DNA of 64,000 nucleotides from positions 186,001 to 250,000 of the IMG/VR virus record IMGVR_UViG_3300042391_000634. One strand, written 5' to 3'. The notes beneath the pieces were generated by a model. The model worked only from the letters and a program-made list of their open reading frames with translations. It was not told the origin of the DNA and made no database searches. Below are positions 1,749 through 48,195 of the stretch, piece after piece. A program made the translations under genes and the position numbers. Numbering within the stretch: position 1 is the stretch's first letter; the number at the start of each line of letters is the position of its first letter.

Positions 1749-3631
1749 TGGAAAAGAAAGAAATATTATTACCGAGTAAAAGATACTTTAAGGCAGAAGA
1801 ACAAGATTTAAATCTTAGTGTTAAGTTAGATAATGATGAAACATTATTAAGAGAGGGAGATAAAGACATAGTATTAAATTTATCTGAATTATTTGATGAT
1901 GAAAGAAATGAATCAATTAATTATAAAATTTACGGTAAAATAAAAATGGTATTTAGAAACATGTATTCTGGATATACAGATTATACCCCTCTATTAAAAA
2001 ACTTATATTTAGTTGGTGATGGCACAGGTGATGATAAAGGATTTATACCATATAATGAATTTGCATTTTTAAGAAATGATGTTATCAGAGAAAATGTAAT
2101 ACCATCTACTGGATTAACATTGGGGAGTTCCAATGTTATACCAACAATAGAATTAACGGGAAATAGATATACAGGTCACACAACAACAACATCAATAGAA
2201 GCACCATATAAAAATTGGAATTTATATTTAAGTTATGTTTATAGTGGAGATACCACTCACCAAATGAAATATACATTATCTGGTAACACAACAGGATGTG
2301 GTGATGGTAAAACTTTTTGTTTCAACTCAGGAGACGGTATACCATTTAGAGTTGAAAGTAATGGAAATTATTATACATTAACGTCACCAGTTGAACATGG
2401 TTTGTTACAAGGTGAATACATTATATTATCCGGTGGAACTTATACGTCATATTCAGGTATAAGCACAGGTAAAACATTTTATACCATACCAATTACTTCA
2501 GATACTGAAAAATTTAGAATTTATTATATTGATAATGTTGGTAACGGTGTGTATAATTCAGAAAAATATGTAATTAACATATTAAAGAATGAATTTACAT
2601 CGGGTACAACATTGAGTTCAGTTGTTTTAGGTAGAAGATGTACCGACATTAACAATATAACAGGAACAACATCAACATATTACGTCCATAAACATAAAAC
2701 AATTACAAGTAAAGATGATTATATAATGGATAAGGTTGGATTTGAATCTTCCATTTTTGAAGACGAAAGAAAAATATTATTTGAAAATACATTACAAGAA
2801 AATGATATTTTAGTTGAAAGAAATAGACAAGAGTCTGTTTTATTTGATTTTAAAAAAACATTTGCACTATCTGGAATTACAAATAATTTAGGTTACACAC
2901 CAACTGAAGTTTATGTTAGTATTATTTTAAAAAATGAAAATGGATTATTTGACTATCCACCTAAAGTAGGTTATAAATTTAATTTTCATAACACATGGAT
3001 TGACCAACATTTTAGTGGAACAACATCAGTTGAAAAGGTTATGACTGGATTAACAGAAACATTTACAGGTAATACATCTGGTTACACATTTACAGGTGGA
3101 AAAACAATACCCATTGGAACAACAGGACTTACAGGTGCATTTGTTGAATATAATAGAAAAGAAATGAAAGAAAGGATTATTAGTGAATCATATCATAGAT
3201 TTTCACATAAACCTTTTATAAGTGGTTCAACACAATTATTTGACCACTTACAATACAGTGGAACAACTTTTTCTGGTGCGTCATTAAATAATATGGTTGG
3301 ATATTATTATCAACCACACCATAGAGTTAAATTAAGGGAGTTGTCACCATATATTGAAACATCAAAACTTGATGCGACACAACCAAATACTTTAATTGGT
3401 TTACCTGAAAATTCCATCTACGATCAAGATGAAAAACTTTGGAAATGGAGAGATTTATATGACCACGGATTTGTTGACCAAGAAGGAAATGGAACGACGT
3501 TCCCATTTATGAATAACATTCATTATGTTGTAAATGATATTAACTTTTATTTGAGAAGTGAACAAACATATTTTAATAAGGTAGATGGAATAAATGGATT
3601 TAATAATTATAAAAATAAAACTAACTGTTAG
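1748..3631 (+). CDS. Putative virion structural (baseplate/tail region) protein
   Basis: 627 aa ORF, coupled on both sides, rich in [ST]GxT motifs like its neighbours. Confidence 0.55.
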   Translation: MEKKEILLPSKRYFKAEEQDLNLSVKLDNDETLLREGDKDIVLNLSELFDDERNESINYKIYGKIKMVFRNMYSGYTDYTPLLKNLYLVGDGTGDDKGFIPYNEFAFLRNDVIRENVIPSTGLTLGSSNVIPTIELTGNRYTGHTTTTSIEAPYKNWNLYLSYVYSGDTTHQMKYTLSGNTTGCGDGKTFCFNSGDGIPFRVESNGNYYTLTSPVEHGLLQGEYIILSGGTYTSYSGISTGKTFYTIPITSDTEKFRIYYIDNVGNGVYNSEKYVINILKNEFTSGTTLSSVVLGRRCTDINNITGTTSTYYVHKHKTITSKDDYIMDKVGFESSIFEDERKILFENTLQENDILVERNRQESVLFDFKKTFALSGITNNLGYTPTEVYVSIILKNENGLFDYPPKVGYKFNFHNTWIDQHFSGTTSVEKVMTGLTETFTGNTSGYTFTGGKTIPIGTTGLTGAFVEYNRKEMKERIISESYHRFSHKPFISGSTQLFDHLQYSGTTFSGASLNNMVGYYYQPHHRVKLRELSPYIETSKLDATQPNTLIGLPENSIYDQDEKLWKWRDLYDHGFVDQEGNGTTFPFMNNIHYVVNDINFYLRSEQTYFNKVDGINGFNNYKNKTNC

Positions 3632-5034
3632 TGGAAATTTTAAAGAATAGTAATAATTTAAAAATAGTGATTAATACTGAAGAAAACTTCAGAACTGACT
3701 TAGGTTGGCAAGATAATCTTGCTCAGTTTGAGGATGAGGTTTTAAAAGATATTATTAATCCATCTAAGAATTATGAAACAGTTAGATACATACATAAACC
3801 ATATACCGGAACCACTTTATTAAAAGAACAAACAGATATATGGTTTCAATTTTATTTTGTTGATGGTAGTGATTATGTTTTAGATTACAATCCCGTCGGA
3901 ATTACCACACAGGAAAATGAATTAATGTTAAAACAAGCAACCGAAAGTTTTTTCAGATTAGAATTATTTAAAACACCAAGTGTAGTTTCACAAACAGGAA
4001 CTACATTAACATGTGAACCCCCAACAAGACAAAATAGAAGATTGGTTAATTCTAAAAATTTATCATTACCATTAGGTGAAAAGTTTTTTTATGTAACAGA
4101 AAATTCTGGTTATTTTATTCATATACCAGTTTTTAACGGGTCAAATTATAGAAACAAAGAAAACATGTATTTGTTTTGGTTTGATGACGAAAGTGCATTA
4201 ACCGATACAAATTTAAGTGGGACAACAACATTAGACCAATATATATTTGGAACGGGGTCCACAATACAAACTATTTTATTTACAAATGAAAATAATAATA
4301 TAACACAAGTAAATATACCAACAGGTGGAACAACATTAATTGGATGGACAGGACAAACATTTACAATTCCAAATATAGTAACTTATAATAGAAATTATTA
4401 TCATGGAATAAATACGTTTTTTATGACGGCAAAATTCTTTGATGCAAAAAATGGACAATTAATAGATTTTACAAATTCAGGATTTACAACAGGACATACA
4501 ATTACTGAGGAAAATGATATGTATTATCAAATTGATTTTGATAATTACGAAAGAACATATCAAATTTACAAATATACAGGAACAAAGGGAGTTAGAATTG
4601 GTAATGGGGTTTCTTCACCAATAAAGTTTTTTGAAAAAGGAGGAGCATCAATACCACCTACACCTACACCAACTCCTACACCTACAATAACACCAACACC
4701 AACGGTTACACCAACACCTGGCGCTCCAACATCAACACCAACTCCTACACCTACACCAACAAATACATTTCAAAATTATAATGGTATTGGAATTTATCCA
4801 TCTTCAGATAATTTAACTTGTTCAAACCATACAGAACAATTAAATGTTTTAATTTATTTAAATGATAGTGATTTTGATATTTATGAATCTACGGGTTATT
4901 TGACTAGTGGAATGGTAATATATGATAATAGTTCAGGAGATCCTTGGTATGTTTCAAATAAAGTATATGATTCAACAATCACTACCATCTTTAGTGTGAC
5001 AAGTGGTGTGTTAAGTGTTAATACATTATGTTAA
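3631..5034 (+). CDS. Structural protein with PT linker and C-terminal Cys-bounded module
   Basis: GTG start overlaps the previous stop. A PTPTPT tract is followed by a C...GMVIYD...C module. Confidence 0.55.
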   Translation: MEILKNSNNLKIVINTEENFRTDLGWQDNLAQFEDEVLKDIINPSKNYETVRYIHKPYTGTTLLKEQTDIWFQFYFVDGSDYVLDYNPVGITTQENELMLKQATESFFRLELFKTPSVVSQTGTTLTCEPPTRQNRRLVNSKNLSLPLGEKFFYVTENSGYFIHIPVFNGSNYRNKENMYLFWFDDESALTDTNLSGTTTLDQYIFGTGSTIQTILFTNENNNITQVNIPTGGTTLIGWTGQTFTIPNIVTYNRNYYHGINTFFMTAKFFDAKNGQLIDFTNSGFTTGHTITEENDMYYQIDFDNYERTYQIYKYTGTKGVRIGNGVSSPIKFFEKGGASIPPTPTPTPTPTITPTPTVTPTPGAPTSTPTPTPTPTNTFQNYNGIGIYPSSDNLTCSNHTEQLNVLIYLNDSDFDIYESTGYLTSGMVIYDNSSGDPWYVSNKVYDSTITTIFSVTSGVLSVNTLC

Positions 5035-5048
5035 AAATATAAAAATAA

Positions 5049-6233
5049 ATGAAAAGAAACGAATATACCATATTAAAAAGACAGATACCTGATGTTCATT
5101 TACATTCGGTTACAGGGTCATATTGGTTTGATAATCAAAATAACTTAATACCGTGGTCGGGAGATACGGGATTTTTACCAACGGGATACACACCATATAG
5201 TGGTTATGTCGTTAACAATGTAACAGGTAGTTTACCAACAGGTTCCTATATATGGAATGGAACTTCTTGGAGTGGATTGACAGGTAGTTTAAATCAAAGT
5301 TATAATTTACCAATAGTATTAAACGCGAGTGCGGATGAAATGGGAGTAATGTCTTCTTTTGATGGTAATATGGAACAAGTTGAACAGTTAGTTAATTTTA
5401 CATATAAACAATCAGGTTCGGCTGTAACAGTTTATAATACGGTTAATCCTGATAAGTTAAGAAAAATTGTAGACCAAAAATACACAATAAAATGGGGGGA
5501 TGGAACTTCAGGTTCGTTAGATGTAAACGGAGGAGTTTTGTATTCAAATTTTCCAACAGCATCACATACATATTCAGCAACAGGTAGTTATACTTTAAAT
5601 TTATTTTTAGATTCACCTTGGAGTAAAGAAAAAATAAATAAAAATATTACAGTTCCAAATACAGGGTCTGTAGTCCTTAATCCTTTAGGAACATTTAGTG
5701 GATTTACAATACCATATACCAATATAACAGGTTCTTTAGACTATATAAATGAATCAAAATTTTCTGGTTTCACAGGTTCAACCATTTTAAAATACATGGC
5801 AATAGGTGGTAGTAAAATAGGTGAATTAAGAAAATATGGAGAAACAACACTTAATAGTTCAATGTATGTTACAGGATTATTTTCAGGTTCAGCTTATACC
5901 GGATATACATTGGATACGGGTAGCATTATTAGTGGTAGTTTAGATATTACTAAAATACCTACCGGTAGTTTATGGTATATGGATTTTGCGGACGGATACA
6001 CTATGGTAACAGGTAAAACTACCAATTTTACCAAAGAAGAGGTTATTAATAATGTTATTACAAGGAACGAACATTTCTTAGGTTTTATTGACGACCCAAA
6101 CGTATATTCTGACATTTTTGTTGAAAGAGGACGACAAGGAGTGATGGAACCAAACCTAAGATTAGGTGAAATTGATAACATGAGTGAGTTAGAAGTTTAT
6201 GGAAATGGATATTTTAAAGTGAGAAAACAATAA
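5049..6233 (+). CDS. Structural protein with PKD-like domain
   Basis: YTIKWGDGT...SHTYSATGSYTLNL matches the PKD-domain signature (WGDG, H-x-Y-xxxG-x-Y). Confidence 0.55.
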   Translation: MKRNEYTILKRQIPDVHLHSVTGSYWFDNQNNLIPWSGDTGFLPTGYTPYSGYVVNNVTGSLPTGSYIWNGTSWSGLTGSLNQSYNLPIVLNASADEMGVMSSFDGNMEQVEQLVNFTYKQSGSAVTVYNTVNPDKLRKIVDQKYTIKWGDGTSGSLDVNGGVLYSNFPTASHTYSATGSYTLNLFLDSPWSKEKINKNITVPNTGSVVLNPLGTFSGFTIPYTNITGSLDYINESKFSGFTGSTILKYMAIGGSKIGELRKYGETTLNSSMYVTGLFSGSAYTGYTLDTGSIISGSLDITKIPTGSLWYMDFADGYTMVTGKTTNFTKEEVINNVITRNEHFLGFIDDPNVYSDIFVERGRQGVMEPNLRLGEIDNMSELEVYGNGYFKVRKQ

Positions 6234-6239
6234 GAATTA

Positions 6240-6247
6240 TATTTATA
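6240..6247 (+). promoter_or_regulatory. TATTTATA putative late promoter
   Basis: Motif recurs upstream of structural genes; 10 nt before ATG 6258. Confidence 0.55.
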
Positions 6248-6257
6248 ATAAAAGTTT

Positions 6258-7178
6258 ATGGCAGTAGGATCATACGGAGTAATTAGACCAGCAGATGTAT
6301 CACCAGATGACGTAGAAATTCTATATCATTATGCGGCTGATAGAGTCTCAACAACCGCAGTAACATTAAAGAAATTAACGTCAAATCAGGTTTTAACCCC
6401 GATTTTACATACAGGAACAACAACAACCGACACGGCCGCAGTTGGAACTGAAATATTAGGTGGATTATATAATCTATTATTAAGTGCGGACGATTTTAGT
6501 GATTTAGGGATTTATACACTTTATATAAGACCAAAACAAATAAGAACCACAGTTACAGATTGTGGTATTTTAGCGTCCCTACCTTCAGTTAGAGGTGTTG
6601 TTATTGATTTATCAAATGTCCCATCCGCAGATAGAAACAAATTTACACCACAAGGTTTAGTTGGTTATAGAGTTGAATACATCAATCCAAACGATAATAA
6701 GAAATTACCTAACTTTTATAAGATAGTAACATCTTCTTTTTATTGCACACCTGTAACAGCAAATTTAAACACAACAACACAAAAGTCAGTAAGATATCAA
6801 TATAGTGAAGGTGCAACAAACTTTATGTTTTTAACGGTTACACCGTCATCTGCACCATCAAACAAACCAAATACGGTTCCATTTATTGGAAGTCCAGGTC
6901 AAAAGATAATCTTATCAAACACATATTTCAATCCAACAACAATACAAATTGATATGGTTGAACATGACGCTTCAACACTTGCAAATGCTCTTTACGGTAA
7001 TCAAACTAAGGCGGTTACACCAGGTATTTACACAATTTACGATAAAGACAATAACATATATAAACAATATAACTTATTTGAAATCAAAGACGACTTTAAT
7101 GATACTCTTTATGAGGTTAGAGAAACTCGTACCGATATTGATGAAACTTTAAACTTTGATACAATTACCAATATCTAA
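6258..7178 (+). CDS. Putative baseplate-associated structural protein
   Basis: 306 aa ORF preceded by TATTTATA and coupled to the baseplate wedge-like gene. Confidence 0.5.
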
Positions 7179-10100
7179 TGGCAAAATATAAAGTTCCAAG
7201 TCAAGCTGCAAGTGGTGCTGATACATTCAGTGACAATCTAGTAGGTAATCAAATTACCACAGGTACTGGTCAATTGACTAATACGAACTTTGCGTTAGAT
7301 AGTGAGGTTATACAACGAGATACAAAGAAATTTAAAACAAACCCATTTTCGGATTTTTTAACTTTAGACGATTTAAAGAAAGAAACCTCAGCTTTATCTA
7401 CAGATGAGATTGCAAAAAGAAAAAAAGAAATAAAATTTAAAGGTTCAAAAGGTGATGCGGGTAAATCTTTATTTGGTTCATTAAAAAGTAGATTAGGTGT
7501 TTCAACACAAAACATAATTATTAATTTTCCTGCTGGAATTTTAATTGATTCAAATAGTTTTATTAGTGTTAGTGGATTAACTGCAACAGGTATTGAGTAT
7601 AATAAATTAAATGATACAACTCAATTTGATGTTGAGTTTAGTATGTTATACAATCCATTTTCTTTAATACTATTAAAACCAAAAAGTAAGGATTTAACAA
7701 CATCTACAAATTCAACAAGAGATTTTTATAGTTCATATACAAAATATGTTATTACGGTTAGTGGTAAAACTTATAATATAACAAATTACACCGAACCGAA
7801 TAGTAATAATATTATAAAATTAAAAGTAAGTGGTAAACCATTTACCGATACAACATATTCAGAAGATATTTTAATTAGACCAAATGACGGAGTAGTTGAT
7901 GAATTTTTTAATGGATTAGATGATTTAGAAGAAACATTATTAAATAGGGATAGTTCTCCAATCTACACCGCTAGTTTCAAAGTTCCAAGAGATAGTTTTG
8001 ACCAAACAAAAACAGAATTAATTTCCGTTAATTATAGTTGGCCAATATCTGATAAAGATAATTGGAATATTAAAATTGCGGGTTTAGAATATGAGGATTA
8101 TTTAAGAAAATTAAGTGATATTGCTGATGAGATAGATGATTACAAATCAAATTTATTTGTAAGATTTTTAACATCCCCACAATTATTTGAGTTTGATTCT
8201 CCAGATAAAAAGGCGGAAGCAATTTTTCAATTGTATGGTCAATCGTTTGATAAAGTAAAAAAATACATTGATAATATTGCTAACATGAGAAATGTTAGTT
8301 ACGACGGAATTAATAATGTTCCCGATGTTTTATTAAAAAACTTAGCAAATACATTAGGATTAGATACTGTTAATTTAATAGATGAAAAAGGTTTAGATGA
8401 ATTATTATATACAAAGACATCACAACAATATTCAGGATTAGTTTCAGGAACATCATTATTAGATGCTGAGTTTGAATTTTATAGAAGGTTATTGGTGAAT
8501 TTAGCTTACATTTATAAATCAAAAGGAACAAGACAATCATTAGAATTCTTTTTAAGATTTTTAGGTGCTCCTGAACCATTGATTAAAATTAATCAATATG
8601 TTTATAAAATTACATCATATCCAAAATCATTTAATTTAGAGGATGATATCTATAATGCGGTTACAGGAAGAAATGTTATAAAAACTGCGGTATTTTTACC
8701 AACGGGTGGAACAATAGATGGTGTGGTTTATACAGGATATTCATACTATATAAAATCAACAACAGGTTCAACATCATTAAGTATTGATGGATATCCCGTA
8801 GATTCAGTTACGTTACAACCAAAATCAGTAACAGGTTCAACAGATTTGTTTTTTCAAAAAGGTTCTGGATGGTATGATAATACGGCAAGTCACAAATCAC
8901 CTTTGATACTTGACCAAGATTTATCAAGTGGAACAACTGTAGATGGTAATTATGTTTTAACGGGAAGAACAAAAACTGTTATTACTAAAAATAGTAGATA
9001 CACATACGGAGAAGATTATTTTGACATATATAGAACATTACCTGGATTAGATACGGGATTTGAATTACAAACATTAATCGATAATAGTCAAACCGAATTA
9101 CTTGGGGACGATTCACGTTTAATTTTAAATCGTAAAAACATTGAAGTTTATTTATCATCCGCACAAGCGGTTGATTTTGACATATACCGTAAATCAAGAG
9201 ATTTAGAATTAACATTCGGAACAAATAGTTTAACACCACAAACGGGAGTAACTTTTGCAGAATATGTTGATTTAATGTTACATCAACAAATTAAAAATTC
9301 TCATATTATAAGATATAAAAAGAATTACATTACATTAGAGGACATATACCAAGATTACATAACAAATAAACACGGATTAAATTTTAATTATACACCATAC
9401 ACTTTCCCTGACATTAATTTGTTTATTGAGAAAATGAGTCCATATTGGACAAGTGTAATAGACCAAATTATACCTTCAACAACATTATGGACTGGAGGTA
9501 ATTTAATTTCAAATAATATTTTTGGAAGACCAAAATATCAATATAAATATGGATGTCAACCAATTGAAATAGTTGATAATTTATATCCTGAAATACCAAG
9601 TGGATATACTCAATATTTTGAAGACGTTATTGATGAATATGATAATGATATATTCACCGAAATCAACTCAATTGGAGAATATAAATACGACGGACGAATT
9701 TATATATTTCCAACTTTTGAAATAAACGGCGTAACCTATTCTGGAACAACAGGAAACACATCATCAGTTACAAGTATTACCGGATTAACATATGTTTTAT
9801 TATCGGGTATAACAAATACAACAAATAGTGCTAAGTTATATGAACCTGATGGTAGTGGAAATGCTTATGCGATGATTAGTGGTACCACAAATACTATTAG
9901 TCCTGATTATGATAAAGTAGAAGATTTGTGGCAAACGGCAATTTTAAATACTATTGAATATATAAATAATTGCACCGATTGTTTATATTCAGGAAATACA
10001 ATTGATAATGTGGGTTATATAAGTTCATATGCACCATTTACGGGTGCAACAGGAATTACAATAACGCCAATAAAAATTAGAAAAAAATTATTAACGGGTA

Positions 10101-12865
10101 AAATTTTCATTGATAATAATGGAGAAGAAAAAATTAAATTAACATCATTTAAATATGGACCTAATGATTGTACAAAAAATATATATGTTGATTTAACCGC
10201 ACGTGCATTTACTGACACTTATGATTGTTCATTAGGACAAGGGTCGGCTGAATGGAAGTTATCAACTCCAACTCCAACCCCAACTCCGGCACCAACCTCA
10301 ACACCAACGGTAACACCAACACCAGTACCAACCTCGACTCCAGTACCAACCTCAACACCAACGGTAACACCAACAAGTACTCCGGCACCAACCGGAACAC
10401 CAACACCAACACCTACTATTACACCAACACCAACGGTAACACCAACACCAACACCAATTCCATGTAATTTTACAATTGAATATACTGCATTAATATCAAC
10501 CCCGACCCCTACACCAACTGTTACACCAACACCAACTGTTACACCAACACCAATTCCATGTAATTTTACAATTGAATATACTGCATTAATATCAACCCCG
10601 ACTCCGACCCCTACTATTACACCAACACCAACGGTAACACCAACCCCAATTCCATGTAGTTTTACAATTGAATATACCGCATTAATTTCAACACCAACCC
10701 CAACACCTACTATTACACCAACACCAACGGTAACACCAACCCCAATTCCATGTATCTTTACAATTGAATATACTGTATTAACACCAACACCAACCCCTAC
10801 ACCAACTGTTACACCAACACCTACACCTAGCATATGTCAAAGACCAACGGGGTTACCTTGGGATATTATTAATTACGCATATAAAATAAATTCGGGAGAT
10901 TCATACACTAACTTCACGTCATCATTACAAGCGGCTTGTGACGCATTAACAGCAATTAGATTGGCGGAACAAACTCAACTTGTTAATTCGGTACTCGGAA
11001 TAACTTTCAATGCTGATCCAGCGGTACAACTTGGAGCAACATTATATAATAATAATTCAATAACAACTTGTGATAAAGTACAATCGGGTTATTATATATA
11101 CGATTTAAGTGGTTTTCAAACGTACATTTTAGGTGTTGGAAGTGATGGATTGGTTACATATTTTGGTGATTGTACGTTAACAACAAATACCCCAACCCCA
11201 ACACCTACGGTTACACCAACACCAGAACCAACTAGTACTCCAACAGTTACACCAATTCCATGTAATTTTACTATTGAGTATACCGTATTAATATCAACCC
11301 CAACCCCAACACCTACTTCAACAAGTACACCAGCACCAACTGAAACACCAACCCCTACACCAACTGTTACCCCAACATCAACACCTACATGTGTGGTAAC
11401 AACATATAATTCATTATTTAGTGGAACTACTTCAGAAAATGCTTGTAATAATATAACACAATATGTGCCGGATGCGTGGGTGTGTATTTTGAATGATAGT
11501 TATTTACAAATTGGTGAAGCTTGGTATACGAATATTAATCTTACAACACCATATCCTGATGGATATTATTGTTTCCATAATGAAACACTTGGGTTTAATA
11601 ATACGTGGGTTTATATTGTAAACGGTTTAATTGATTCTACCGGATTATGTCTGACACCAACAAATACACCGACCCCAACACCTACGGTTACATCAACACC
11701 TGCACCTACTGGCACTCCAACACCAACACCAATTCCATGTAATTTTACAATTGAATATACTGCATTAATATCAACCCCAACCCCAACTCCAACACCATTA
11801 CCAACTAGTACACCAACAGTAACGCCAGATCCAACTAGTACTCCAACAGTAACACCTAACCCAACTAGTACCCCAACAGTAACACCTAACCCAACTAGTA
11901 CCCCAACAGTAACACCTAATCCTACTAGTACACCATTACCAACTAGTACCCCAACGATTACACCAGAACCAACTAGTACACCATTACCAACTAGTACACC
12001 AACGGTTACACCAATTCCGTGTAACTTCACCATTGAATACACTGCATTAATATCAACTCCAACACCAAATCCAACTAGTACACCAACAGTAACACCAAAT
12101 CCAACTAGTACACCAACAGTAACACCAAATCCAACTAGTACACCAACAGTAACGCCAGATCCAACTAGTACACCAAATCCAACTAGTACACCAACAGTAA
12201 CGCCAGATCCAACTAGTACACCAAATCCAACTAGTACACCAACAGTAACGCCAGATCCAACTAGTACACCAAATCCAACTAGTACACCAACACCAACACC
12301 ATTACCAACATCCACACCAACTGTTACACCAACACCTTGCCCATCAGAAGGTACTTTTTTAATGTCTACTTGTGTTGGTTATGATTTATATTACAGATTC
12401 GCGAATGGTAGTTGTGGTACGTATGACACATTTATTGAAAGTAATTCCTCAAGTTGTGGTTATGTTGCACCAACACCCACCCCAACCCCAACCCCATTAC
12501 CGGACGGAGTTTTAAGTTTTGGATCCACAGATGGTGGGTTCATACAGTGTGGAGCGGGTTACGATTCTAATGACTATGAATATTATAGAACATATGAGGT
12601 TATTTTTACGAGCGCACGAAATACGATGGGATATGTTGTTGTCTATTTAAGCGATAATTCAAGTATACAAATACCATTTAATGAAAATGATACCTCCGCA
12701 TCTACAACCATTTTCTGTGGATGTGGATCATCATGTGCGGACATACAATATGTAATGAATATAATATACACCACACCAACCCCAACACCAACAGCGGAAC
12801 CAACATTTACACCAACTCCGACACCAGAAGGAGGTGGAGGACAGGACCCCCTTGAACCTATATAA
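7178..12865 (+). CDS. Baseplate wedge-like protein (P2 gpI/T4 gp7-like region) with long PT-repeat C-terminal extension
   Basis: [14 protein letters not shown]...[28 protein letters not shown] resembles the Tail_P2_I-type motif. The C-terminal ~870 aa consist of PT linkers, 7 PIPCxFTIEYT peptides and Cys modules. Confidence 0.6.
10262..12340 (+). repeat. Pro-Thr coding repeats with 7 interspersed PIPC(N/S/I)FTIEYT(A/V)L units
   Basis: ACACCA-type codon repeats and near-identical ~45-nt units (ccaattccatgtaattttacaattgaatatactgcattaatatca). Confidence 0.9.
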
Positions 12866-12890
12866 AATAAAATAAAATAAAATAAACAGA

Positions 12891-12898
12891 TATTTATA
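12891..12898 (+). promoter_or_regulatory. TATTTATA putative late promoter
   Basis: Intergenic, upstream of ATG 12915. Confidence 0.5.
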
Positions 12899-12914
12899 AA
12901 TATAAATTAAAATT

Positions 12915-13652
12915 ATGCCAGTTTTTTTACCATCTAAAACAATAAATTTAAAATTAGGAGCGGGAAGTTCCTCATTTCCAGACAATTTCCAAATTGACAT
13001 ATGGTCTTGGAATGTTACAACTGATGCTGCCGAATTTAATAGAACATATGCAACAGGAATTACTAAAACACAATTAGCAACCGCAGGTGTGGGTTATAAT
13101 GTTACAGGTATTACAGGTAACGATTATAAAGTTGTTGCAACTAGTACAGGAACATGTACAACATTAGACGATGTTGAGGTTTATGTGGATGCATTATCAA
13201 TATACCAACCATCATTTAGTGGAACGTTTACAGATATATATAATGGTTATCCTACGACACCACAAGTTAATACTTTTACACAAACAGGTACAGGTAGTGG
13301 AGAAGATTCGTTTGCTGTAACGGGACCTTATGGTGGTCTACAAAATATTACAGGTAATCACGTTGTTGGTATTTTTGATACTTTATCATATATAGACGCA
13401 ACAGATTTTACATTATCTTATGTAAGTGGAACATCGGGAGGAGTCACAGTTTATGATGATTATGCTAACGGACCATTTAGTAGTTTTTCTATCACTAAAT
13501 CGGGTAAATCATTCACATTAATAGGTAGTTCTAACACATCATTAGCTCCACAAAATTTTGTACCTTTTATTAAAGGAACTATGAGATTAACATATGACCC
13601 ATCAACTTATTATGTTGATTTTGATTATTGGTATAACCCAACTAACATTTAA
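12915..13652 (+). CDS. Putative virion accessory protein
   Basis: N-terminal ~90 aa (TGITKTQL...VVATSTGTC) resemble the N-termini of 13713 and 14966. Confidence 0.5.
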   Translation: MPVFLPSKTINLKLGAGSSSFPDNFQIDIWSWNVTTDAAEFNRTYATGITKTQLATAGVGYNVTGITGNDYKVVATSTGTCTTLDDVEVYVDALSIYQPSFSGTFTDIYNGYPTTPQVNTFTQTGTGSGEDSFAVTGPYGGLQNITGNHVVGIFDTLSYIDATDFTLSYVSGTSGGVTVYDDYANGPFSSFSITKSGKSFTLIGSSNTSLAPQNFVPFIKGTMRLTYDPSTYYVDFDYWYNPTNI

Positions 13653-13700
13653 TAAAACACTTTATTATAAGGGGTTTTTTGTTTAATTTCTATATAATAC

Positions 13701-13708
13701 TATTTATA
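13701..13708 (+). promoter_or_regulatory. TATTTATA putative late promoter
   Basis: 4 nt before ATG 13713. Confidence 0.5.
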
Positions 13709-13712
13709 GAAT

Positions 13713-14366
13713 ATGTCCGAATATTTTAATGCTGAAGTTAATATAGGTAAAAAGAGTAACTCAATTGAAAAAGTTAGTTTATACGCATGTTCTGGATCAA
13801 CGGAAGCAACATGTGACCCAACACCAATATCTGGTTATAATGGTATTCTATGGACAGATACAAAATTTTCACCACTTTTTGAGAGTGGTTCATATCCATC
13901 ATTATCAGGATTGGTAACATTTATAACTGGATTAACGTTATACACACATATATATATTAGAGTATTAACAACATCAAGTTATAATGGAAGTTGTATACGT
14001 AGTAATATGATACCAATTATTGGTATCCCAACTCCAACAGCAACACCATTACCAACCTCTACACCAACACCAATACCATGTAGTTTTGACGGAACCATTG
14101 TTTATGGATTACCTGTTACCCCAACTCCTACACCAACACCATTACCAACCTCAACACCAAACCCAACTAGTACACCAACCTCAACACCAAACCCAACTAG
14201 TACACCAACCTCAACACCAAACCCAACACCAACTAGTACACCAACTGTTACACCAACAGCAACAACATTAAGTGGGCCTTATTTTAACTCAATAGGATTA
14301 GCTTATAGCCCAAGTAATCCAAATAAATGTCAAGCATATACTTGTTATAATAATTTAACAACATAA
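13713..14366 (+). CDS. Virion accessory protein with PT linker
   Basis: Shared N-terminal domain, a [12 protein letters not shown] peptide, a PT tract, and a short Cys-containing C-terminal segment. Confidence 0.55.
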
Positions 14367-14384
14367 TTTAAAAAAAAATAATAT

Positions 14385-14705
14385 ATGAGTATACTATGTG
14401 AGTTAGTCACTTTTTATCATAATTTATCGGCAGGATCAAACGGAAATTCACTATTGAATGAAACTTTGTATGGTGACACATCAGGTGGTACAATAATGGA
14501 TGGATATTATTCCGATGGAACATATATCTACACCGTATCGGGAAGTCTTGTTACATATGTTGAAACTGCAGCTTCATTAGGATGTCAAGGTACAACACCA
14601 GAACCAACCGTAACACCAACACCACAAGGATATTCACAACAATTGGGTTATGGAACATCCTCAAATAACGCATGTATTTTCTACACCGGACCAATTGAAG
14701 GGTAA
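14385..14705 (+). CDS. Small Cys-module protein (apparent domain fragment)
   Basis: LYGD...GYYSDG...V...C, then a PT linker and LGYGTSSNNAC. Confidence 0.5.
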   Translation: MSILCELVTFYHNLSAGSNGNSLLNETLYGDTSGGTIMDGYYSDGTYIYTVSGSLVTYVETAASLGCQGTTPEPTVTPTPQGYSQQLGYGTSSNNACIFYTGPIEG

Positions 14706-14726
14706 CCACTTTAAAAATAAAAAACA

Positions 14727-14951
14727 ATGTCAGCAGGAACTTTACAATTTTATTCTAATTACGAAACATTACCAACGGCATTATTCGACGATGATATGAA
14801 CCCATTATCACCAACGCCAATTATGTATACAAATATTAACATGACTAGTACAGCAAATAATGGTTATTATTCAAATGGTGTCAATTGGTGGAGAGTAACA
14901 GGTGGTGCAGGAGTAATAACAGATACCGGTGTTTGTCCGGCGGTTGATTAA
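14727..14951 (+). CDS. Small Cys-module protein (apparent domain fragment)
   Basis: MYTN...NGYYSNG...VTGGAGVITDTGVC; A-rich start region. Confidence 0.5.
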   Translation: MSAGTLQFYSNYETLPTALFDDDMNPLSPTPIMYTNINMTSTANNGYYSNGVNWWRVTGGAGVITDTGVCPAVD

Positions 14952-14965
14952 AATAAAAAAAGAAA

Positions 14966-15934
14966 ATGTCAATACCAGTAACAATAACATTAAACACAAT
15001 AGTAGGAACACCAGGTCCTTTTAGTTTATATTCATGTATTGAATCGACTTGTTCGGGTTCATTAACACCATTTGTAACAGGAGTGTCGTTATCTGATTTA
15101 CAAACTGGTAGTTTAGTTCCTGATATTAGCGGAAATACACCTACTTACGTTAAAATTAAATCTACAGGAGGAAGTTGCGCGTATGAAATTATTAAACCAA
15201 TAACAGGAATACCTACGGTAACTCCAACTCCAACACCAACCATAACACCAACACCTGGTTCAACTAGTACCCCAACTCCAACTCCAACTCCAACAGCAAC
15301 AACGGGAACATGTGTACCTAAAGAATATAACATAACAGCTAACGGTAATTTCTATTGGATTGATTGTGAAGGAAATGACAGATATAGTTATTTTACAACT
15401 GCAGATAGTCCAATATGTATTTGTAGTTCAAGTAATTTACCAATATCGTTAGATGGTGGAACAGGAACATTAGCGGGCGGTGGATGTGAATGTAATCCAG
15501 TAACACCAACTCCAACACCGACAGTTACACCAACACCAACCCCAACACCAAACTATTATAATGTAAAAGTTAAATTAGTAGGTATGATGGGTACCAGTGG
15601 GAATTTAACGGTACGTCAATCATCAGATGGTATAACATTTATAAATTCAGTAACAATAACTACCACAGATAACGATGTTGCTCAACAGTCCTTTAACGGT
15701 ACACCAGGTTATTATTATTACTTTATAGTTGCAAGAACTTCAGGTAATTCTGATAGATTGAATTGGTATACCCAAGTATTCCCATCCGACTTCAATCCTG
15801 GATCGATAGCTGATGCCGGTTGCACTTCACTTGGAGGAGCAACATTACAATCAGAGACTTTCCAATTACCAAATCCGACACAAAGTGTATCTGAAGTGTT
15901 ATTTTATGGAGATATAAGTGACGCATGTCTATAA
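14966..15934 (+). CDS. Virion accessory protein with PT linkers and Cys-rich modules
   Basis: N-terminal GPFSLYSC...TGVSLSDL...KIKSTGGSC domain, two PT tracts and a WIDCEG module. Confidence 0.55.
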   Translation: MSIPVTITLNTIVGTPGPFSLYSCIESTCSGSLTPFVTGVSLSDLQTGSLVPDISGNTPTYVKIKSTGGSCAYEIIKPITGIPTVTPTPTPTITPTPGSTSTPTPTPTPTATTGTCVPKEYNITANGNFYWIDCEGNDRYSYFTTADSPICICSSSNLPISLDGGTGTLAGGGCECNPVTPTPTPTVTPTPTPTPNYYNVKVKLVGMMGTSGNLTVRQSSDGITFINSVTITTTDNDVAQQSFNGTPGYYYYFIVARTSGNSDRLNWYTQVFPSDFNPGSIADAGCTSLGGATLQSETFQLPNPTQSVSEVLFYGDISDACL

Positions 15935-15950
15935 TAAAATTAAACAAAGA

Positions 15951-15958
15951 TATTTATA
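15951..15958 (+). promoter_or_regulatory. TATTTATA putative late promoter
   Basis: 4 nt before ATG 15963. Confidence 0.5.
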
Positions 15959-15962
15959 ACAT

Positions 15963-18041
15963 ATGAGTTTTTTAAATAGTAATAATTCGGAGTTCTTGTC
16001 AGCAAGAATAACCAATAGAGGTAGAAAGGCAATAGCCAAAGGTAGTTTCAATATTGAATATTTTCAAATTGGGGACTCTGAATATGATTACACAACACCA
16101 TTCACAAACTTAACGGGAACCACAGGTCACCAAAAAGTGTTTGCACCATTTGATTATGATGCGGGTGTAAAATACCCACTTTCATTAGATTCGGATCTTA
16201 CAACAACTTATGGACAACCAATATCAAATAGTGAAACGATTAAATTAAGAAATGAAATGGGTGCTGGTGGATTTGTATCACAATATTCAAGTGCTCCAAT
16301 AGTAAAAACCGAAACTCAACAAATTGCATATACCAAAATAAGTGGAACAACAAGTTTAGTTGTTCCGACTGGAGTAACATTTAATGATTGTGAATATATT
16401 ACAATAGTATTTGATAGTTTTTCAACCAAAACAATAACAGGACAAACAAATAGTTTAATTTATAAAGTATTATCTATTAGTGGAAACACATTAACATTAG
16501 ATCGTAACACACCAAACTTAGCGACTTTAACCGGTAATGCACAAGTTGTTTGTAACAAATGTTTAATAGAAGAACAAACTGACGACGTATTCAATCCAAT
16601 TGATTACACAGGCCAATTAAATTCGTGGACATTAAACACGGTATGGACAGAAAAACCAATCGGTGGTGATTATAATGGAACAGATGAAAGTCTATCTGGA
16701 TATACAAGTAATCAATATGTATCAATCAAAAATTTATTAGGTTATACTAAAACAGGACAAACATTTAATAATTTAACAGGAGGAACAATAACAGGAACAA
16801 CATTTAAAAATTCGTTTGATGAATTAATACAAGTTTCACCGTCAGAACAAAGATGTATTGCAATAGTTCATTATTCTGAATTGGGAGATATAGTTGTTGA
16901 CCCCGAAAGATTTTTTAAATATGATGATTACATAAGTTCATTAACAGGAACAACCGGAACGAGTATTTCGTTATTTAATGAGTTAGATGGCGCAGATAGA
17001 GACTACGATAAAAGTGATAGTGAATATTTTGAAGTTTATATTCCATTTATTTATTATCATAGAAATACAGGAACAACATTAGGTGCTTTATTTACAATGG
17101 ATACAACTGATTATTATATTAATTCATCAATTAACTCAAGAAATCAACTTAAGTTTAGATTTTTAGTTGACGAACAAAATAATAAAGTGGGTAAAGTTTT
17201 TGTGAATAATAAAATAATCGTATTTGATGACCAAGAATTGGTTGCGATGTTAGATTATAGGTCAAATAGAAGATACACATTACCATCACCAAAATTAGGG
17301 TTATCATCAAGTGACGGAGTTGCCGCACAATCTATGGTAACAACTACAGGAGATACGGCTTGGGTTACATATATGTTTGAAAATACAAGTGGTAATACTT
17401 TAAATTCATTCCCTTGTAATTATTTTAATAAAATTAGTGGTAATGGAACACCATCACAAATAATGTTTAAATTTAGTGGTAACTCATTTTCCAATATGGC
17501 AACAACGTTAAGTGGAGTAAAAGATGGTTATGTTGCAAATAAATTTTACGCATTAGTTCAAACAGGAACAACACCAACACCAAATTTATGGAAAAAAATA
17601 GATATCACTTCACAAATACCAAGTTATACAAGTGGTTATATTAACCCAACAAGTTTAACGGGAGTATCATTTACAATATCTTATTCAGGTTATACAGGTG
17701 CAACCGCATTTGATTTTGAAGACCATATGTCAGGAGTAACTTCCGATTATCTATGGAACACAACAGGTTCAACAACACAACCTCAATTCGGTGACGAACA
17801 ACCATTCCCTGGTAGTGTTAGATTGGTTAGAGCAAGTGATATTGAAGAGATGAATATGATAATTAACTTACCGTCCACACAATTTACAACAACTCAAAAT
17901 CCAACGTATACTTCTGGAGATAAATACATTACCGAAGTTGCATTATTAGATTCTAATAAGGAACCGTTAGTTGTTGCAAAAACACCGACACCCGTTAAAA
18001 GAGCAGGAACTCAAGTGTTTGCTATCAGATTAGATTTCTAA
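15963..18041 (+). CDS. Baseplate/tail-fibre attachment protein (DUF3751-like termini)
   Basis: N-terminal ARITNRGRKAIAKG..IEYFQIGDSE and C-terminal YITEVALLD...LVVAK..PVKR...RLDF resemble tail-collar/baseplate proteins of large myophages. Confidence 0.55.
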   Translation: MSFLNSNNSEFLSARITNRGRKAIAKGSFNIEYFQIGDSEYDYTTPFTNLTGTTGHQKVFAPFDYDAGVKYPLSLDSDLTTTYGQPISNSETIKLRNEMGAGGFVSQYSSAPIVKTETQQIAYTKISGTTSLVVPTGVTFNDCEYITIVFDSFSTKTITGQTNSLIYKVLSISGNTLTLDRNTPNLATLTGNAQVVCNKCLIEEQTDDVFNPIDYTGQLNSWTLNTVWTEKPIGGDYNGTDESLSGYTSNQYVSIKNLLGYTKTGQTFNNLTGGTITGTTFKNSFDELIQVSPSEQRCIAIVHYSELGDIVVDPERFFKYDDYISSLTGTTGTSISLFNELDGADRDYDKSDSEYFEVYIPFIYYHRNTGTTLGALFTMDTTDYYINSSINSRNQLKFRFLVDEQNNKVGKVFVNNKIIVFDDQELVAMLDYRSNRRYTLPSPKLGLSSSDGVAAQSMVTTTGDTAWVTYMFENTSGNTLNSFPCNYFNKISGNGTPSQIMFKFSGNSFSNMATTLSGVKDGYVANKFYALVQTGTTPTPNLWKKIDITSQIPSYTSGYINPTSLTGVSFTISYSGYTGATAFDFEDHMSGVTSDYLWNTTGSTTQPQFGDEQPFPGSVRLVRASDIEEMNMIINLPSTQFTTTQNPTYTSGDKYITEVALLDSNKEPLVVAKTPTPVKRAGTQVFAIRLDF

Positions 18042-29248: not shown

Positions 29249-29542
29249 ATGAAAAAGTTAATCGAATTAATAAAAACATATAAACTACAGATACTGATTT
29301 TTTTAACAGTTGTATTCTTTTTTCGCTCTTGTAGTAGTTCAAGTAAAGTGACTAAATTAGAAAAAATTGAAAAACAAAACGTATCTATGATTGATAGTCT
29401 TAAAACTAAACATAAAAACGAAAAAATAGCAATTCATAGTTTTTATGATAATTGGATTACACAAAAAGATAGAGGACCACAATTAATGGAACTACATTTT
29501 ATTGTTAAAGAAAACTTAAAAAAAGAACAAGAATCTAAATGA
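29249..29542 (+). CDS. Small membrane-anchored coiled-coil protein (lysis cassette?)
   Basis: N-terminal TM ending FRSC; TATTTATA at 29228-29235. Confidence 0.45.
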   Translation: MKKLIELIKTYKLQILIFLTVVFFFRSCSSSSKVTKLEKIEKQNVSMIDSLKTKHKNEKIAIHSFYDNWITQKDRGPQLMELHFIVKENLKKEQESK

Positions 29543-43186: not shown

Positions 43187-43200
43187 TATAGAAAAATAAA

Positions 43201-48096: not shown

Positions 48097-48167
48097 ATAA
48101 AACAAATCATTAATAAAAATATATTAAAAAAAACATAGAATTAATACGAGGATAGGTAATAACAAAG

Positions 48168-48175
48168 TATTTATA
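48168..48175 (+). promoter_or_regulatory. TATTTATA putative late promoter
   Basis: Intergenic, upstream of ATG 48196. Confidence 0.5.
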
Positions 48176-48195
48176 AACTAAACAAACAAGCATAG

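What the first reader, a model, noticed from the sequence alone, without database searches (positions are those of the whole stretch)
10454..15934. Possible cellulosome-like scaffold/docking system on the virion: tethered Cys-beta-strand peptides plus partner domains
Seen: the baseplate-like protein 7178 carries 7 copies of PIPC(N/S/I)FTIEYT(A/V)L, each too short to fold alone and isolated between PT linkers, with one Cys and alternating hydrophobics (C-x-F-x-I-x-Y). The following genes 12915, 13713 and 14966 share a ~90-aa N-terminal beta-rich domain ending near STGxC/NGSC but carry different C-terminal cargo. Gene 13713 itself contains a similar peptide ([12 protein letters not shown]). Inference: the peptides are donor strands that complete, and possibly disulfide-lock, the partner domains. 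This would let one scaffold recruit several interchangeable adhesins, with 13713 allowing branching. I know of no described phage system of this kind.
Basis: inference. Interest (0 to 1): 0.78.

Follow-up and report, generated by a model that had tools for sequence, protein, structure and literature searches.

The report
Peptide-and-domain docking code on phage baseplate
A huge aquatic phage carries strings of ten-residue cysteine-bearing beta-strand peptides whose sequence changes in step with a small Ig-like domain at the start of neighbouring genes, which suggests an undescribed plug-and-socket system for hanging interchangeable proteins on the tail baseplate.

Summary
Gene 7178-12865 has seven PIPC[NSI]FTIEYT[AV]L peptides between Pro/Thr linkers, and gene 13713 has one related peptide.

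The peptides are not a chance or recent repeat. I found 451 of them in 53 related loci, with the shared pattern [DN]-C-x-F-x-[VI]-x-[VIL]-x-[VIY]. Cys is invariant and Phe is 98% conserved. Synonymous sites are as diverged within a genome as between genomes.

- **The N-domains.** The N-termini of 12915 and 14966 belong to one Ig-like family (1472 clusters) with one conserved unpaired Cys. All 76 homologues of 12915 have exactly one Cys. The 13713 N-domain is a separate family.
- **Covariation.** The peptide variant follows the N-domain subtype (r = 0.62), not the protein backbone (r = 0.09-0.28) or the modules lying between them.
- **Swaps and predictions.** Natural swaps and five prospective checks agree with this.
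- **Pairings in the window.** The 7178 peptides pair with the 12915 N-domain. The 13713 peptide pairs with the 14966 N-domain. The last element of 7178's conserved part probably pairs with the 13713 N-domain.

Direct binding, strand insertion and a disulfide lock are inferred, not shown. The complex prediction gave no answer. AlphaFold2 models the 13713 N-domain as a complete fold.

Interest is high.

The parts
7178..12865 (+). Scaffold gene (1895 aa). It has a conserved N-terminal part of about 1026 aa. The variable C-terminal half holds PT linkers, seven Cys-strand peptides and four small Cys-bounded globular modules (aa 1221-1333, 1407-1491, 1725-1762, 1777-1862).
   Evidence: ORF and translation. 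More than 300 relatives share 50-78% identity over aa 1-1040 and have variable C-termini. Architecture. The gene lies a few genes downstream of gp25-like and Baseplate_J-like genes.
10220..10255 (+). Last element of the conserved part (aa 1015-1026, [12 protein letters not shown]), just before the first PT linker. Candidate docking site for the 13713-type N-domain.
   Evidence: This element co-varies with the N13713-family domain: r = 0.475 against 0.26 for the adjacent region, partial r = 0.41, p = 3e-4, 21 loci. The assignment is an inference.
10454..10498 (+). Peptide 1, [15 protein letters not shown] (aa 1093-1107)
10550..10594 (+). Peptide 2, [15 protein letters not shown] (aa 1125-1139)
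10646..10690 (+). Peptide 3, [15 protein letters not shown] (aa 1157-1171)
10742..10786 (+). Peptide 4, [15 protein letters not shown] (aa 1189-1203)
11252..11296 (+). Peptide 5, [15 protein letters not shown] (aa 1359-1373)
11729..11773 (+). Peptide 6, [15 protein letters not shown] (aa 1518-1532)
12011..12055 (+). Peptide 7, [15 protein letters not shown] (aa 1612-1626). It has five synonymous and no amino-acid changes relative to peptide 1.
12915..13652 (+). Small cargo protein (245 aa). An Ig-like N-domain (aa about 8-80, nt about 12936-13154) is followed by the lone Cys81 (nt 13155-13157) and a beta-rich C-terminal domain. Proposed cognate partner of the seven peptides.
   Evidence: Family membership. 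All 76 homologues have exactly one Cys. AlphaFold2 model. Peptide variant and N-domain are coupled.
13713..14366 (+). Adaptor-like protein (217 aa). It has an Ig/FN3-like N-domain (aa 1-105, three Cys, Cys94 before the last strand), a PT linker, a class-2 peptide, a further PT linker and a short tail.
   Evidence: Family found in 26 loci. AlphaFold2 pLDDT is 79-92 for aa 1-105.
14070..14114 (+). Class-2 peptide [15 protein letters not shown] (aa 120-134 of 13713). Proposed docking site for the 14966 N-domain.
   Evidence: It co-occurs with the 14966-subtype N-domain in WIN, L019/L103, L021, L028/29 and L150, and nowhere else in the set. It is unstructured and not docked in cis in the AlphaFold2 model.
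14385..14705 (+). Small stand-alone gene (106 aa). It encodes a Cys-bounded module like those inside 7178. It has no N-domain and no peptide.
   Evidence: The gene is separated from 13713 by TAA stops and an A-rich spacer.
14727..14951 (+). Small stand-alone gene (74 aa) of the same kind
14966..15934 (+). Cargo protein (322 aa). The N-domain of the 14966 subtype (aa 1-85, nt 14966-15220) has Cys24 and Cys29 plus the odd Cys71 (nt 15176-15178). Two further modules follow, separated by PT linkers.

Best explanation
The region encodes a modular docking system on the baseplate of a huge phage. That it sits on the virion is itself inferred from gene order.

**The sockets.** Short amphipathic beta-strand peptides of 9-10 residues start with an invariant Cys and are held on flexible Pro/Thr linkers.

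**The plugs.** Small Ig-like N-terminal domains end in one conserved unpaired Cys just before their last strand. They carry interchangeable C-terminal cargo.

**Proposed pairings in this window**
- The seven [10 protein letters not shown] peptides of protein 7178 recruit copies of protein 12915.
- The [12 protein letters not shown] peptide of protein 13713 recruits protein 14966.
- Protein 13713 itself probably docks on the Cys-strand element that ends the conserved part of 7178.

The result would be a branched, multivalent display of cargo domains.

**Shown:** the motif, its selection, the domain families, the lone Cys, and the specific covariation of peptide variant with N-domain subtype.

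**Inferred:** direct binding; binding by beta-strand addition to an edge of the Ig-like sandwich; covalent locking by a Cys-Cys disulfide once the virion is in an oxidising medium; a role of the cargo in adsorption.
For: 1. **Conservation and selection.**
   - There are 451 peptides in 75 proteins of 53 loci. Cys is 100%, Phe(+2) 98% and V/I(+4) 96% conserved.
   - pN/pS is 0 at Cys and 0.03 at Phe.
   - Given the same amino acid, copies use the same codon at the same rate within a genome (0.63) as between genomes (0.62). Yet the variable positions are 50% identical within a locus, even across different proteins, against 24% between loci. Each genome's variant is therefore kept by selection, not by recent gene conversion.
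2. **The domain.** The profile finds 1472 clusters, nearly always at residues 1-82. Of the best 150, 119 have exactly one Cys in the domain and 126 have an odd total Cys count. All 76 homologues of 12915 have exactly one Cys.
3. **Co-occurrence.**
   - In the scan centred on the large protein, every locus with peptides and enough downstream DNA (about 35) has the domain gene.
   - None of the six loci without peptides has it in the DNA held.
   - In the scan centred on the domain, 46 of 50 loci have peptide-bearing proteins within 10 kb.
   - Three of the other four (L117, L124, L137) are cut short. The fourth, L130, has SCDFGMDVV just before the first linker of the upstream protein. L125 has the full 10 kb upstream and was not examined further.
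4. **Specific covariation (28 loci).**
   - Peptide-variant distance against N-domain distance gives r = 0.62 (p <= 5e-4), and 0.64 after collapsing related loci.
   - Against the scaffold's own N-terminal 1000 aa it gives 0.28 (0.09 after collapsing).
   - Against the scaffold's last 120 aa it gives -0.02, and against the cargo of the same small protein 0.17.
   - Against the 692-aa neighbour it gives 0.13.
5. **Natural swaps.**
   - L011 and L018 share backbone (91%), the scaffold's C-terminal domain (92%) and the small protein's cargo (77%). Their N-domains are only 48% identical, and their peptides differ (CNFDVEVIVV against CLFDVDVEV).
   - The window's closest backbone relative, L003, has other peptides and another N-domain subtype. 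L023 is more distant, yet it shares both the peptides and the 12915-type domain (87%).
6. **Prospective tests.**
   - L151 and L152 (N-domain 87-88% identical, backbone 61%) have C[NS]FTIEY peptides.
   - L153 and L154 (N-domain 46-47%, cargo 75% and 61%) have CSFG[IV]S[IV]V[IV] peptides, as does L064, and on a different carrier protein.
   - The 14966-subtype protein P0266 has CSFDATIVYGLP in the upstream gene.
7. **Baseplate context:**
Against: - **No physical or structural evidence of binding.** The complex prediction scored 0.02 and the tool says it is no evidence either way.
- **Fold completion is not required, at least for 13713.** AlphaFold2 models its N-domain as a complete six-to-seven-strand sandwich and leaves its peptide unstructured. 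ESM Atlas models of the 14966 N-domain align with complete FN3 domains.
- **The domain occurs without the peptides.** Divergent copies are found in two contigs with no detectable Cys-strand peptides. G002 has an internal copy in a 1230-aa protein. G003 has one at the N-terminus of a 955-aa protein. These contigs are only 28% and 43% complete.
- **Covariation is not perfect.** L006 and L021 have similar N-domains but different peptides. Mantel tests on related sequences overstate significance.
- **Stoichiometry looks heavy in some relatives.** L002 has 28 peptides and one domain gene.
- **The virion location is inferred from synteny only.**
Confidence: 0.6

Rival explanations
1. The peptides bind one another. 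Amphipathic Cys-strands from different chains, or from different peptide-bearing proteins, zip into small intermolecular beta-sheets with interchain disulfides. This would bundle the floppy PT linkers into fibres or nets. The N-domain would co-vary because it joins the same sheet or is only indirectly coupled.
For: In many relatives a second and third protein carry the same peptide variant as the scaffold. Variable positions are 50% identical between peptides of different proteins in one locus. The last strand of the N-domains, together with its Cys, resembles a peptide.
Against: In this genome only 7178 carries the canonical peptide. In-register pairing of identical chains would not require different copies along one chain to stay alike. 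The polar face is often D-x-D-x-D, which disfavours stacking. This model does not by itself explain why the variant follows the N-domain of a protein that has no peptides.
Confidence: 0.13
2. There is no binding. The peptides are structural punctuation of the linkers, for example stiffeners, relics of the first or last strand of lost modules, or modification sites. Their association with the N-domain reflects cassette-wise recombination at repetitive PT-linker DNA.
For: The region is strongly mosaic. Every module has its best match in a different locus. Peptides resemble the Cys-plus-strand ends of neighbouring modules. Divergent N-domains exist without peptides.
Against: Modules lying physically between peptide arrays and the N-domain do not co-vary with either (r = -0.02 and 0.17). 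In L011 against L018 they stayed 77-92% identical while arrays on two proteins and the N-domain all switched. Purifying selection on Cys and Phe, and genome-specific variants without DNA homogenisation, argue for a specific function. Prospective predictions held.
Confidence: 0.12
3. Peptides and N-domains each bind a common third partner, and match one another only through it. The partner could be a host surface structure (for example an open beta-barrel or a pilus groove that accepts beta-strands) or a phage assembly factor.
For: Amphipathic beta-strands with alternating hydrophobic residues are what beta-augmentation receptors accept (established knowledge). Multivalent display on long linkers suits adhesion. 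Relatives carry discoidin and BspA-type LRR modules in the same proteins.
Against: An N-terminal domain followed by variable cargo is the usual layout of a virion anchor, not of a receptor-binding tip (established knowledge of phage fibres). No third co-varying gene was found in the loci, though none was sought systematically. This model is less parsimonious than direct pairing.
Confidence: 0.08

Closest known systems
Cellulosome scaffoldin with cohesin-dockerin pairs
   Same: One scaffold has many docking sites separated by Pro/Thr-rich linkers. Cargo proteins share a small docking module and differ in the rest. Cognate pairs have type specificity. Adaptor proteins allow branching.
   Different: There are no cohesin or dockerin domains (Pfam search negative). 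The site on the scaffold is a 10-residue peptide, not a 150-aa domain. The plug is an Ig-like domain, not a Ca-binding dockerin. The setting is a phage baseplate. A disulfide is suspected.
Donor-strand complementation in chaperone-usher and type V pili
   Same: A short strand with alternating hydrophobic residues is proposed to pair with an Ig-like domain of another polypeptide.
   Different: No chaperone, usher or pilin homology was found. The 13713 N-domain models as a complete fold, so edge addition is more likely than filling a missing strand. The strands are internal, repeated and tethered in linkers, not terminal extensions. An invariant Cys is present.
Branched receptor-binding-protein complexes of phages (CBA120/ViI tailspikes TSP1-4, G7C gp63.1-gp66, SP6/K1-5 adaptors)
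   Same: N-terminal anchor domains attach several different receptor-binding proteins to one another and to the baseplate. Cargo is exchanged between phages while anchors are kept.
   Different: In those systems, from my own knowledge, anchors bind folded domains of the adaptor. Here the sites are arrays of linear peptides with a sequence code. There is no sequence similarity (PHROGs, Pfam and PDB searches negative).
SpyTag/SpyCatcher (split CnaB2 domain)
   Same: A roughly 13-residue beta-strand tag docks on an Ig-like domain and becomes covalently locked.
   Different: That system is engineered and uses a Lys-Asp isopeptide. The window's peptides have no Asp. The only invariant reactive residue is Cys, so a disulfide is the candidate chemistry.

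Membership tests
Cellulosome cohesin-dockerin system | Cohesin domains on the scaffold (Pfam PF00963) | tested here: not met
   Pfam scan of 7178 at E <= 0.1 gave no family.
Cellulosome cohesin-dockerin system | Dockerin module with duplicated Ca-binding loops on cargo proteins (PF00404) | tested here: not met
   Pfam scan of 12915, 13713 and 14966 gave no family. The N-domains model as beta-sandwiches.
Chaperone-usher / type V pilus donor-strand systems | Acceptor Ig-like fold lacks a strand and has an open groove | tested here: inconclusive
   The 13713 N-domain is modelled complete, with a strand after Cys94. In 12915 only five strands are confident and the stretch after Cys81 has pLDDT < 50. 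No coordinates were available to inspect a groove.
Chaperone-usher / type V pilus donor-strand systems | Pilin, chaperone or usher homology | tested here: not met
   No Pfam, NCBIfam or PHROG match.
Isopeptide tag/catcher (CnaB-type) | Reactive Asp/Asn in the strand and a Lys plus catalytic Glu in the domain | tested here: not met
   The window's peptide [10 protein letters not shown] has no Asp, and its Asn(+1) varies (N/S/I). Only Cys is invariant across 451 peptides.
Ig-like / FN3-like beta-sandwich fold (N-domains) | Two-sheet sandwich of about 7 strands in 75-105 residues | tested here: inconclusive
   ESM Atlas models of 14966 aa 1-85 align with FN3 domains at TM 0.6-0.77. Foldseek against the PDB gives only weak Ig/FN3 hits, with best E = 0.08 for 13713 and 0.006 for 12915.
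Phage baseplate-associated protein (scaffold 7178) | Encoded within the baseplate gene module | tested here: met
   GPW_gp25 lies at genome 182093-182320 (E = 1e-10, over the cut-off). A weak Baseplate_J match lies at 183552-184064. Both are upstream of the colinear gene block. Synteny is conserved in relatives.
Phage baseplate-associated protein (scaffold 7178) | Homology to a known baseplate or fibre protein, or presence in virions | tested here: not met
   No hit in Pfam, PHROGs (only linker-composition matches), NCBIfam, PDB sequences or the phage record collection. Presence in virions cannot be tested with these tools.

The most novel reading that the evidence does not exclude
This is a covalent, programmable click-assembly system of virions. 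Each genome uses its own peptide code, and up to three orthogonal peptide-domain pairs operate in one phage. Ig-like plugs add the tethered strand to their sheet and lock it by a disulfide between the two lone cysteines after lysis. The baseplate then carries a branched brush of dozens of exchangeable cargo domains. Swapping a 75-residue plug together with the peptide array re-wires what is displayed. If true, this would be a natural, orthogonal tag/catcher family.
Probability: 0.3. Interest if true: 0.9.

Novelty: new variant of a known kind. Interest (0 to 1): 0.8.

Why it matters
- **A new way to attach host-recognition modules.** If the pairing is real, it shows how large phages attach and exchange many such modules. 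They would use linear peptide sockets on flexible linkers rather than folded adaptor domains, with a sequence code that keeps cognate partners together through rampant module shuffling.
- **Two protein elements get a role.** The Cys-strand peptide and the lone-Cys Ig-like N-domain are widespread and unannotated. The domain has 1472 clusters, and the scaffold has hundreds of relatives in aquatic metagenomes.
- **The hypothesis is directly testable.** Peptides and small domains can be expressed without a cultured host.
- **Possible tools.** Orthogonal peptide-domain pairs, possibly locked by a disulfide, could be useful protein-assembly reagents.

Tried and rejected
- **BLASTP between the three N-termini:** nothing significant. 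Profiles were needed.
- **Family and sequence searches:** Pfam, PHROGs, NCBIfam, PDB sequences and tblastn against phage records gave no informative match for any gene from 3631 to 18041. The PHROG hits are linker composition.
- **Complex prediction:** 12915 plus the N-domains of 14966 and 13713 plus one peptide scored 0.02, 'no answer'. I do not use it as evidence.
- **Structure prediction:** The fold searches gave only generic Ig/FN3 likeness.
- **Cis-docking of 13713's own peptide:** not seen.
- **Homology of the 13713 N-domain with the 12915/14966 family:** hhalign is not significant.
- **Locus scan with alignment A2:** no conserved stretch to search with. The scan with 12915 alone found one contig.
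- **Per-column covariation to locate the interface:** the signal is dominated by the divergent 12915 subfamily, so I do not rely on it.
- **Cys counts of the second N-domain type:** 1 Cys with peptides and 3 without, but only four sequences, so inconclusive.
- **Reading 13713, 14385 and 14727 as one gene through stops:** rejected. They are in the same frame but separated by TAA stops and A-rich spacers with their own ATGs.
- **Recent repeat expansion or gene conversion as the cause of peptide similarity:** rejected on synonymous divergence.
- **Cargo function of 12915:** ESM Atlas gave only weak leads.
- **Three of four prospective contigs for the 14966 subtype:** too short to test.
- **The moraphage paper (PMC12619734):** I could not link it to this lineage.

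Full report
**Setting.**

The window is bases 186001-250000 of a single 335,630-bp, 31% GC virus record, rated complete by CheckV. The window holds collagen-like fibre genes and an SbcC-like gene. A gp25-like gene and a weak Baseplate_J-like gene lie just upstream of it.

The colinear block runs 69-18041 and ends before resolvase-, primase- and SbcCD-type genes. It is therefore the distal part of a myovirus baseplate module. That assignment rests on gene order only. No gene from 3631 to 18041 matches any Pfam, PHROG, NCBIfam or PDB family in an informative way.

**The observation.**

Gene 7178-12865 encodes 1895 aa with seven copies of PIPC[NSI]FTIEYT[AV]L at residues 1093, 1125, 1157, 1189, 1359, 1518 and 1612.
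- Each copy sits between Pro/Thr linkers of 22-100 residues. Four small Cys-bounded globular modules are interspersed.
- The genome holds no other copy except a related [15 protein letters not shown] in gene 13713.
- The seed PIPC.FT arose once in total across 2000 shuffles of the C-terminal region.
- Copy 7 differs from copy 1 by five synonymous changes and no amino-acid change.

**The peptides are an old, selected motif.**

The first 1040 aa of the protein have more than 300 metagenomic relatives at 50-78% identity. Their C-termini vary from nothing to almost 2000 aa. Some carry discoidin or BspA-type LRR modules.

I worked with 80 IMG/VR loci, two further contigs and the window. In these I found 451 short islands of the same kind, in 75 proteins of 53 loci.
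- The shared pattern is T-P-[DN]-C-x-F-[DETN]-[VI]-[DETN]-[VIL]-x-[VIY]-[VIA]-T-P-T-P.
- Cys is 100%, Phe 98% and V/I 96% conserved.
- This describes an amphipathic beta-strand of 9-10 residues with a hydrophobic face and an often acidic face.
- The islands occur in the large protein and, in many relatives, in one or two further fibre-like proteins.

Among copies within a locus, pN/pS is 0 at Cys and 0.03 at Phe. Given the same amino acid, two copies use the same codon at the same rate within a locus (0.63) as between loci (0.62). The copies are therefore not kept alike by recent duplication or gene conversion. Yet the variable positions are 50% identical within a locus, even between peptides of different proteins, against 24% between loci. 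Each genome keeps its own variant of the peptide by selection.

**The partner domains.**

BLASTP sees nothing between the three N-termini. Profiles built from the relatives' neighbouring genes give a clearer picture.
- The N-termini of 12915 and 14966 belong to one family of about 75 residues.
- The 13713 N-terminus forms a second family of about 105 residues. It is not significantly related to the first by profile-profile comparison.
- A search of 1.84 billion representative proteins with the first profile finds 1472 clusters, almost always at residues 1-82 of proteins of 77-608 aa with unrelated C-termini.
- Of the best 150, 119 have exactly one Cys in the domain. It sits in a conserved S-T-G-x-C just before the last strand. 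126 have an odd total number of Cys.
- All 76 full-length homologues of 12915 (38-100% identity) have exactly one Cys, at the same place.
- The 13713 family has three conserved Cys. Two are close together and one sits before the last strand.

The structure predictions add the following.
- AlphaFold2 models 12915 aa 8-77 as five strands and a short helix (pLDDT 71-91), with low confidence after Cys81.
- It models 13713 aa 1-105 as a confident six-to-seven-strand sandwich, with a strand after Cys94.
- ESM Atlas models and Foldseek give only generic FN3/Ig-like likeness.

**Coupling of peptides and domains.**

*1. Co-occurrence.*
- In every locus where the large protein has peptides and enough downstream DNA is held (about 35), a gene with the first domain family is present. 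It starts 40-90 bp after the large gene in most, and up to about 7 kb further down, after the second peptide-bearing protein, in others.
- None of six loci with a peptide-less large protein has the domain gene in the DNA held.
- In a scan centred on the domain, 46 of 50 loci have peptide-bearing proteins within 10 kb.
- Three of the other four (L117, L124, L137) are cut short.
- The fourth, L130, has SCDFGMDVV just before the first linker of the upstream protein. L125 has the full 10 kb upstream and was not examined further.

*2. Covariation over 28 distinct loci.* The table gives the correlation of peptide-variant distance with the distance of each module.

| Module compared | r |
|---|---|
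| N-domain of the small protein | 0.62 (partial 0.58-0.65, permutation p <= 5e-4) |
| Scaffold's own first 1000 aa | 0.28 |
| Last 270 aa of the scaffold's conserved part | 0.25 |
| Last 120 aa of the scaffold (lies between peptides and domain gene) | -0.02 |
| Cargo of the same small protein | 0.17 |
| 13713-type domain | 0.32 |
| 692-aa neighbour | 0.13 |
| 306-aa neighbour | 0.24 |

After collapsing related loci to 18 or 14 representatives, the N-domain value is 0.64 and the backbone value 0.09-0.24.

*3. Natural swaps.*
- L011 and L018 are 91% identical in the backbone and 92% in the scaffold's C-terminal domain.
- They are also 90% identical in a second protein's N-domain and 77% in the small protein's cargo.
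- Yet the small protein's N-domain is only 48% identical. The peptides on two proteins read CNFDVEVIVV in one and CLFDVDVEV in the other.
- L018 and L020 share N-domain (89%) and peptide variant but not cargo (26%).
- The window's closest backbone relative, L003 (81-86%), has CNFDVDID peptides and the common N-domain type.
- L023 is more distant over aa 500-1040 (61% against 81% for L003). It shares both CNFTIEY peptides and the 12915-type domain (87%).

*4. Prospective checks.*
- I predicted that close homologues of the 12915 N-domain would sit next to TIEY-type peptides. L151 and L152 (N-domain 87-88%, backbone 61%) do.
- L153 and L154 have 46-47% identical N-domains but 75% and 61% identical cargo. 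Their peptides read CSFG[IV]S[IV]V[IV], as in L064, which has the same N-domain subtype. There the array sits on a different carrier protein.

**A second pair.**

The 13713-type peptide P-C-S-F-[DN]-[AG]-[NT]-[IV]-V-Y-G-L-P occurs only in the window, L019 (the same contig as L103), L021 and L028/29. The 14966 subtype of the N-domain occurs in exactly these loci, in the next N-domain gene. The carrier N-domains differ and the intervening cargo differs.

Of four further 14966-subtype proteins looked up, only one contig was long enough to test. Its upstream gene carries CSFDATIVYGLP.

**A third pair (weaker evidence).**

The last element of the scaffold's conserved part is D-C-[RST]-[FL]-x-G-G-x-A-x-Y. 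It corresponds to aa 1015-1026 here and resembles the 13713-type peptide. It co-varies with the 13713-type domain: r = 0.475 against 0.26 for the adjacent region, partial r = 0.41, p = 3e-4.

This fits L015. That locus has this element and a 13713-type gene, but no canonical peptides and no first-family domain gene.

**Mechanism.**

The most economical reading is a plug-and-socket system. I give direct cognate binding about 0.6.

The details are inference. They rest on the following.
- The peptide has an amphipathic strand pattern.
- The partner is Ig-like.
- There is one invariant Cys in the peptide and one conserved unpaired Cys before the last strand of the domain.
- Three internal copies of the domain begin with G-C-S-x-Y-x-F-x-L, a Cys-plus-strand unit ahead of the first strand.

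From this I propose that the peptide adds as an edge strand next to the last strand, and that the two Cys form a disulfide outside the cell. I give this more detailed version about 0.3-0.4.

Fold completion in the strict donor-strand sense is not supported for 13713. It remains open for 12915.

**Evidence against, and limits.**
- There is no binding evidence. The one complex prediction gave no answer.
- Divergent copies of the domain occur in two incomplete contigs without detectable peptides.
- Covariation has exceptions, such as L006 and L021.
- Mantel statistics on related sequences are optimistic.
- The cargo functions are unknown.
- The virion location is inferred.

**Comparison with known systems.**

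The system works like a cellulosome scaffoldin, and like the branched receptor-binding-protein complexes of some phages. The proposed binding mode recalls pilus donor strands and SpyTag/SpyCatcher. It is a member of none of these families. No defining domain is present, and the docking site is a linear peptide.

I found no description of the motif or the domain in the paper library.

**Verdict.**

The finding is a new variant of modular docking, of high interest and directly testable.

Noticed in passing
window 40505-51798 and 55699-59424: Four very large genes (893, 1631, 1200 and 1241 aa) are full of collagen triple-helix repeats with tail-fibre PHROG matches. GC is higher here (36-44%) than in the rest of the window.
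   Followed up: partly
window 52248-55568: A 1106-aa protein has about 458 residues of Pro/Thr linker but no Cys-strand peptides. A 113-aa PT-rich ORF lies just upstream. It sits among the collagen-like fibre genes.
   Followed up: partly
window 14385-14705 and 14727-14951: Two tiny stand-alone genes each encode one Cys-bounded module like those strung inside 7178 and in the long C-termini of 13713's relatives. They are in the same frame as 13713 but separated by TAA stops and A-rich spacers. This may be a fission of a longer ancestral gene. How they would attach to anything is unexplained.
   Followed up: partly
window 3631-5034: The 467-aa baseplate-module protein has its own PT linker and an extra C-terminal module (aa about 385-467). 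Relatives such as L001 (354 aa) and L002 (284 aa) lack both.
   Followed up: no
window 10219-10833 and 11611-12315, minus strand: Long minus-strand ORFs made of GVGV repeats are mirror images of the PT-linker coding sequence, not genes. The same codon bias produces the strong negative GC skew (-0.37) at 10-12 kb.
   Followed up: yes
L081 contig (G002:C1:29026-43089, minus strand): A relative encodes a 4688-aa protein that is about 4200 residues of Ser/Thr/Pro linker behind a 62-aa N-domain. This is an extreme case of the linker architecture, without any peptide islands.
   Followed up: no
L153 11319-13769 and L154 4963-7389: In this sub-lineage the homologue of the scaffold's conserved part is a short protein (816 and 808 aa) with no linker region. 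The peptide array sits on a separate 1968-aa protein upstream, still next to the cognate small-protein gene.
   Followed up: partly
L011 7686-12584 and 13399-15366: A further island type, CSLDGDIVL / CSLGGDII, is interspersed among the canonical peptides of L011. It could be yet another docking variant.
   Followed up: no
window 29539-30687: A 382-aa protein has a TacA1-like antitoxin domain match (E = 2e-6).
   Followed up: no
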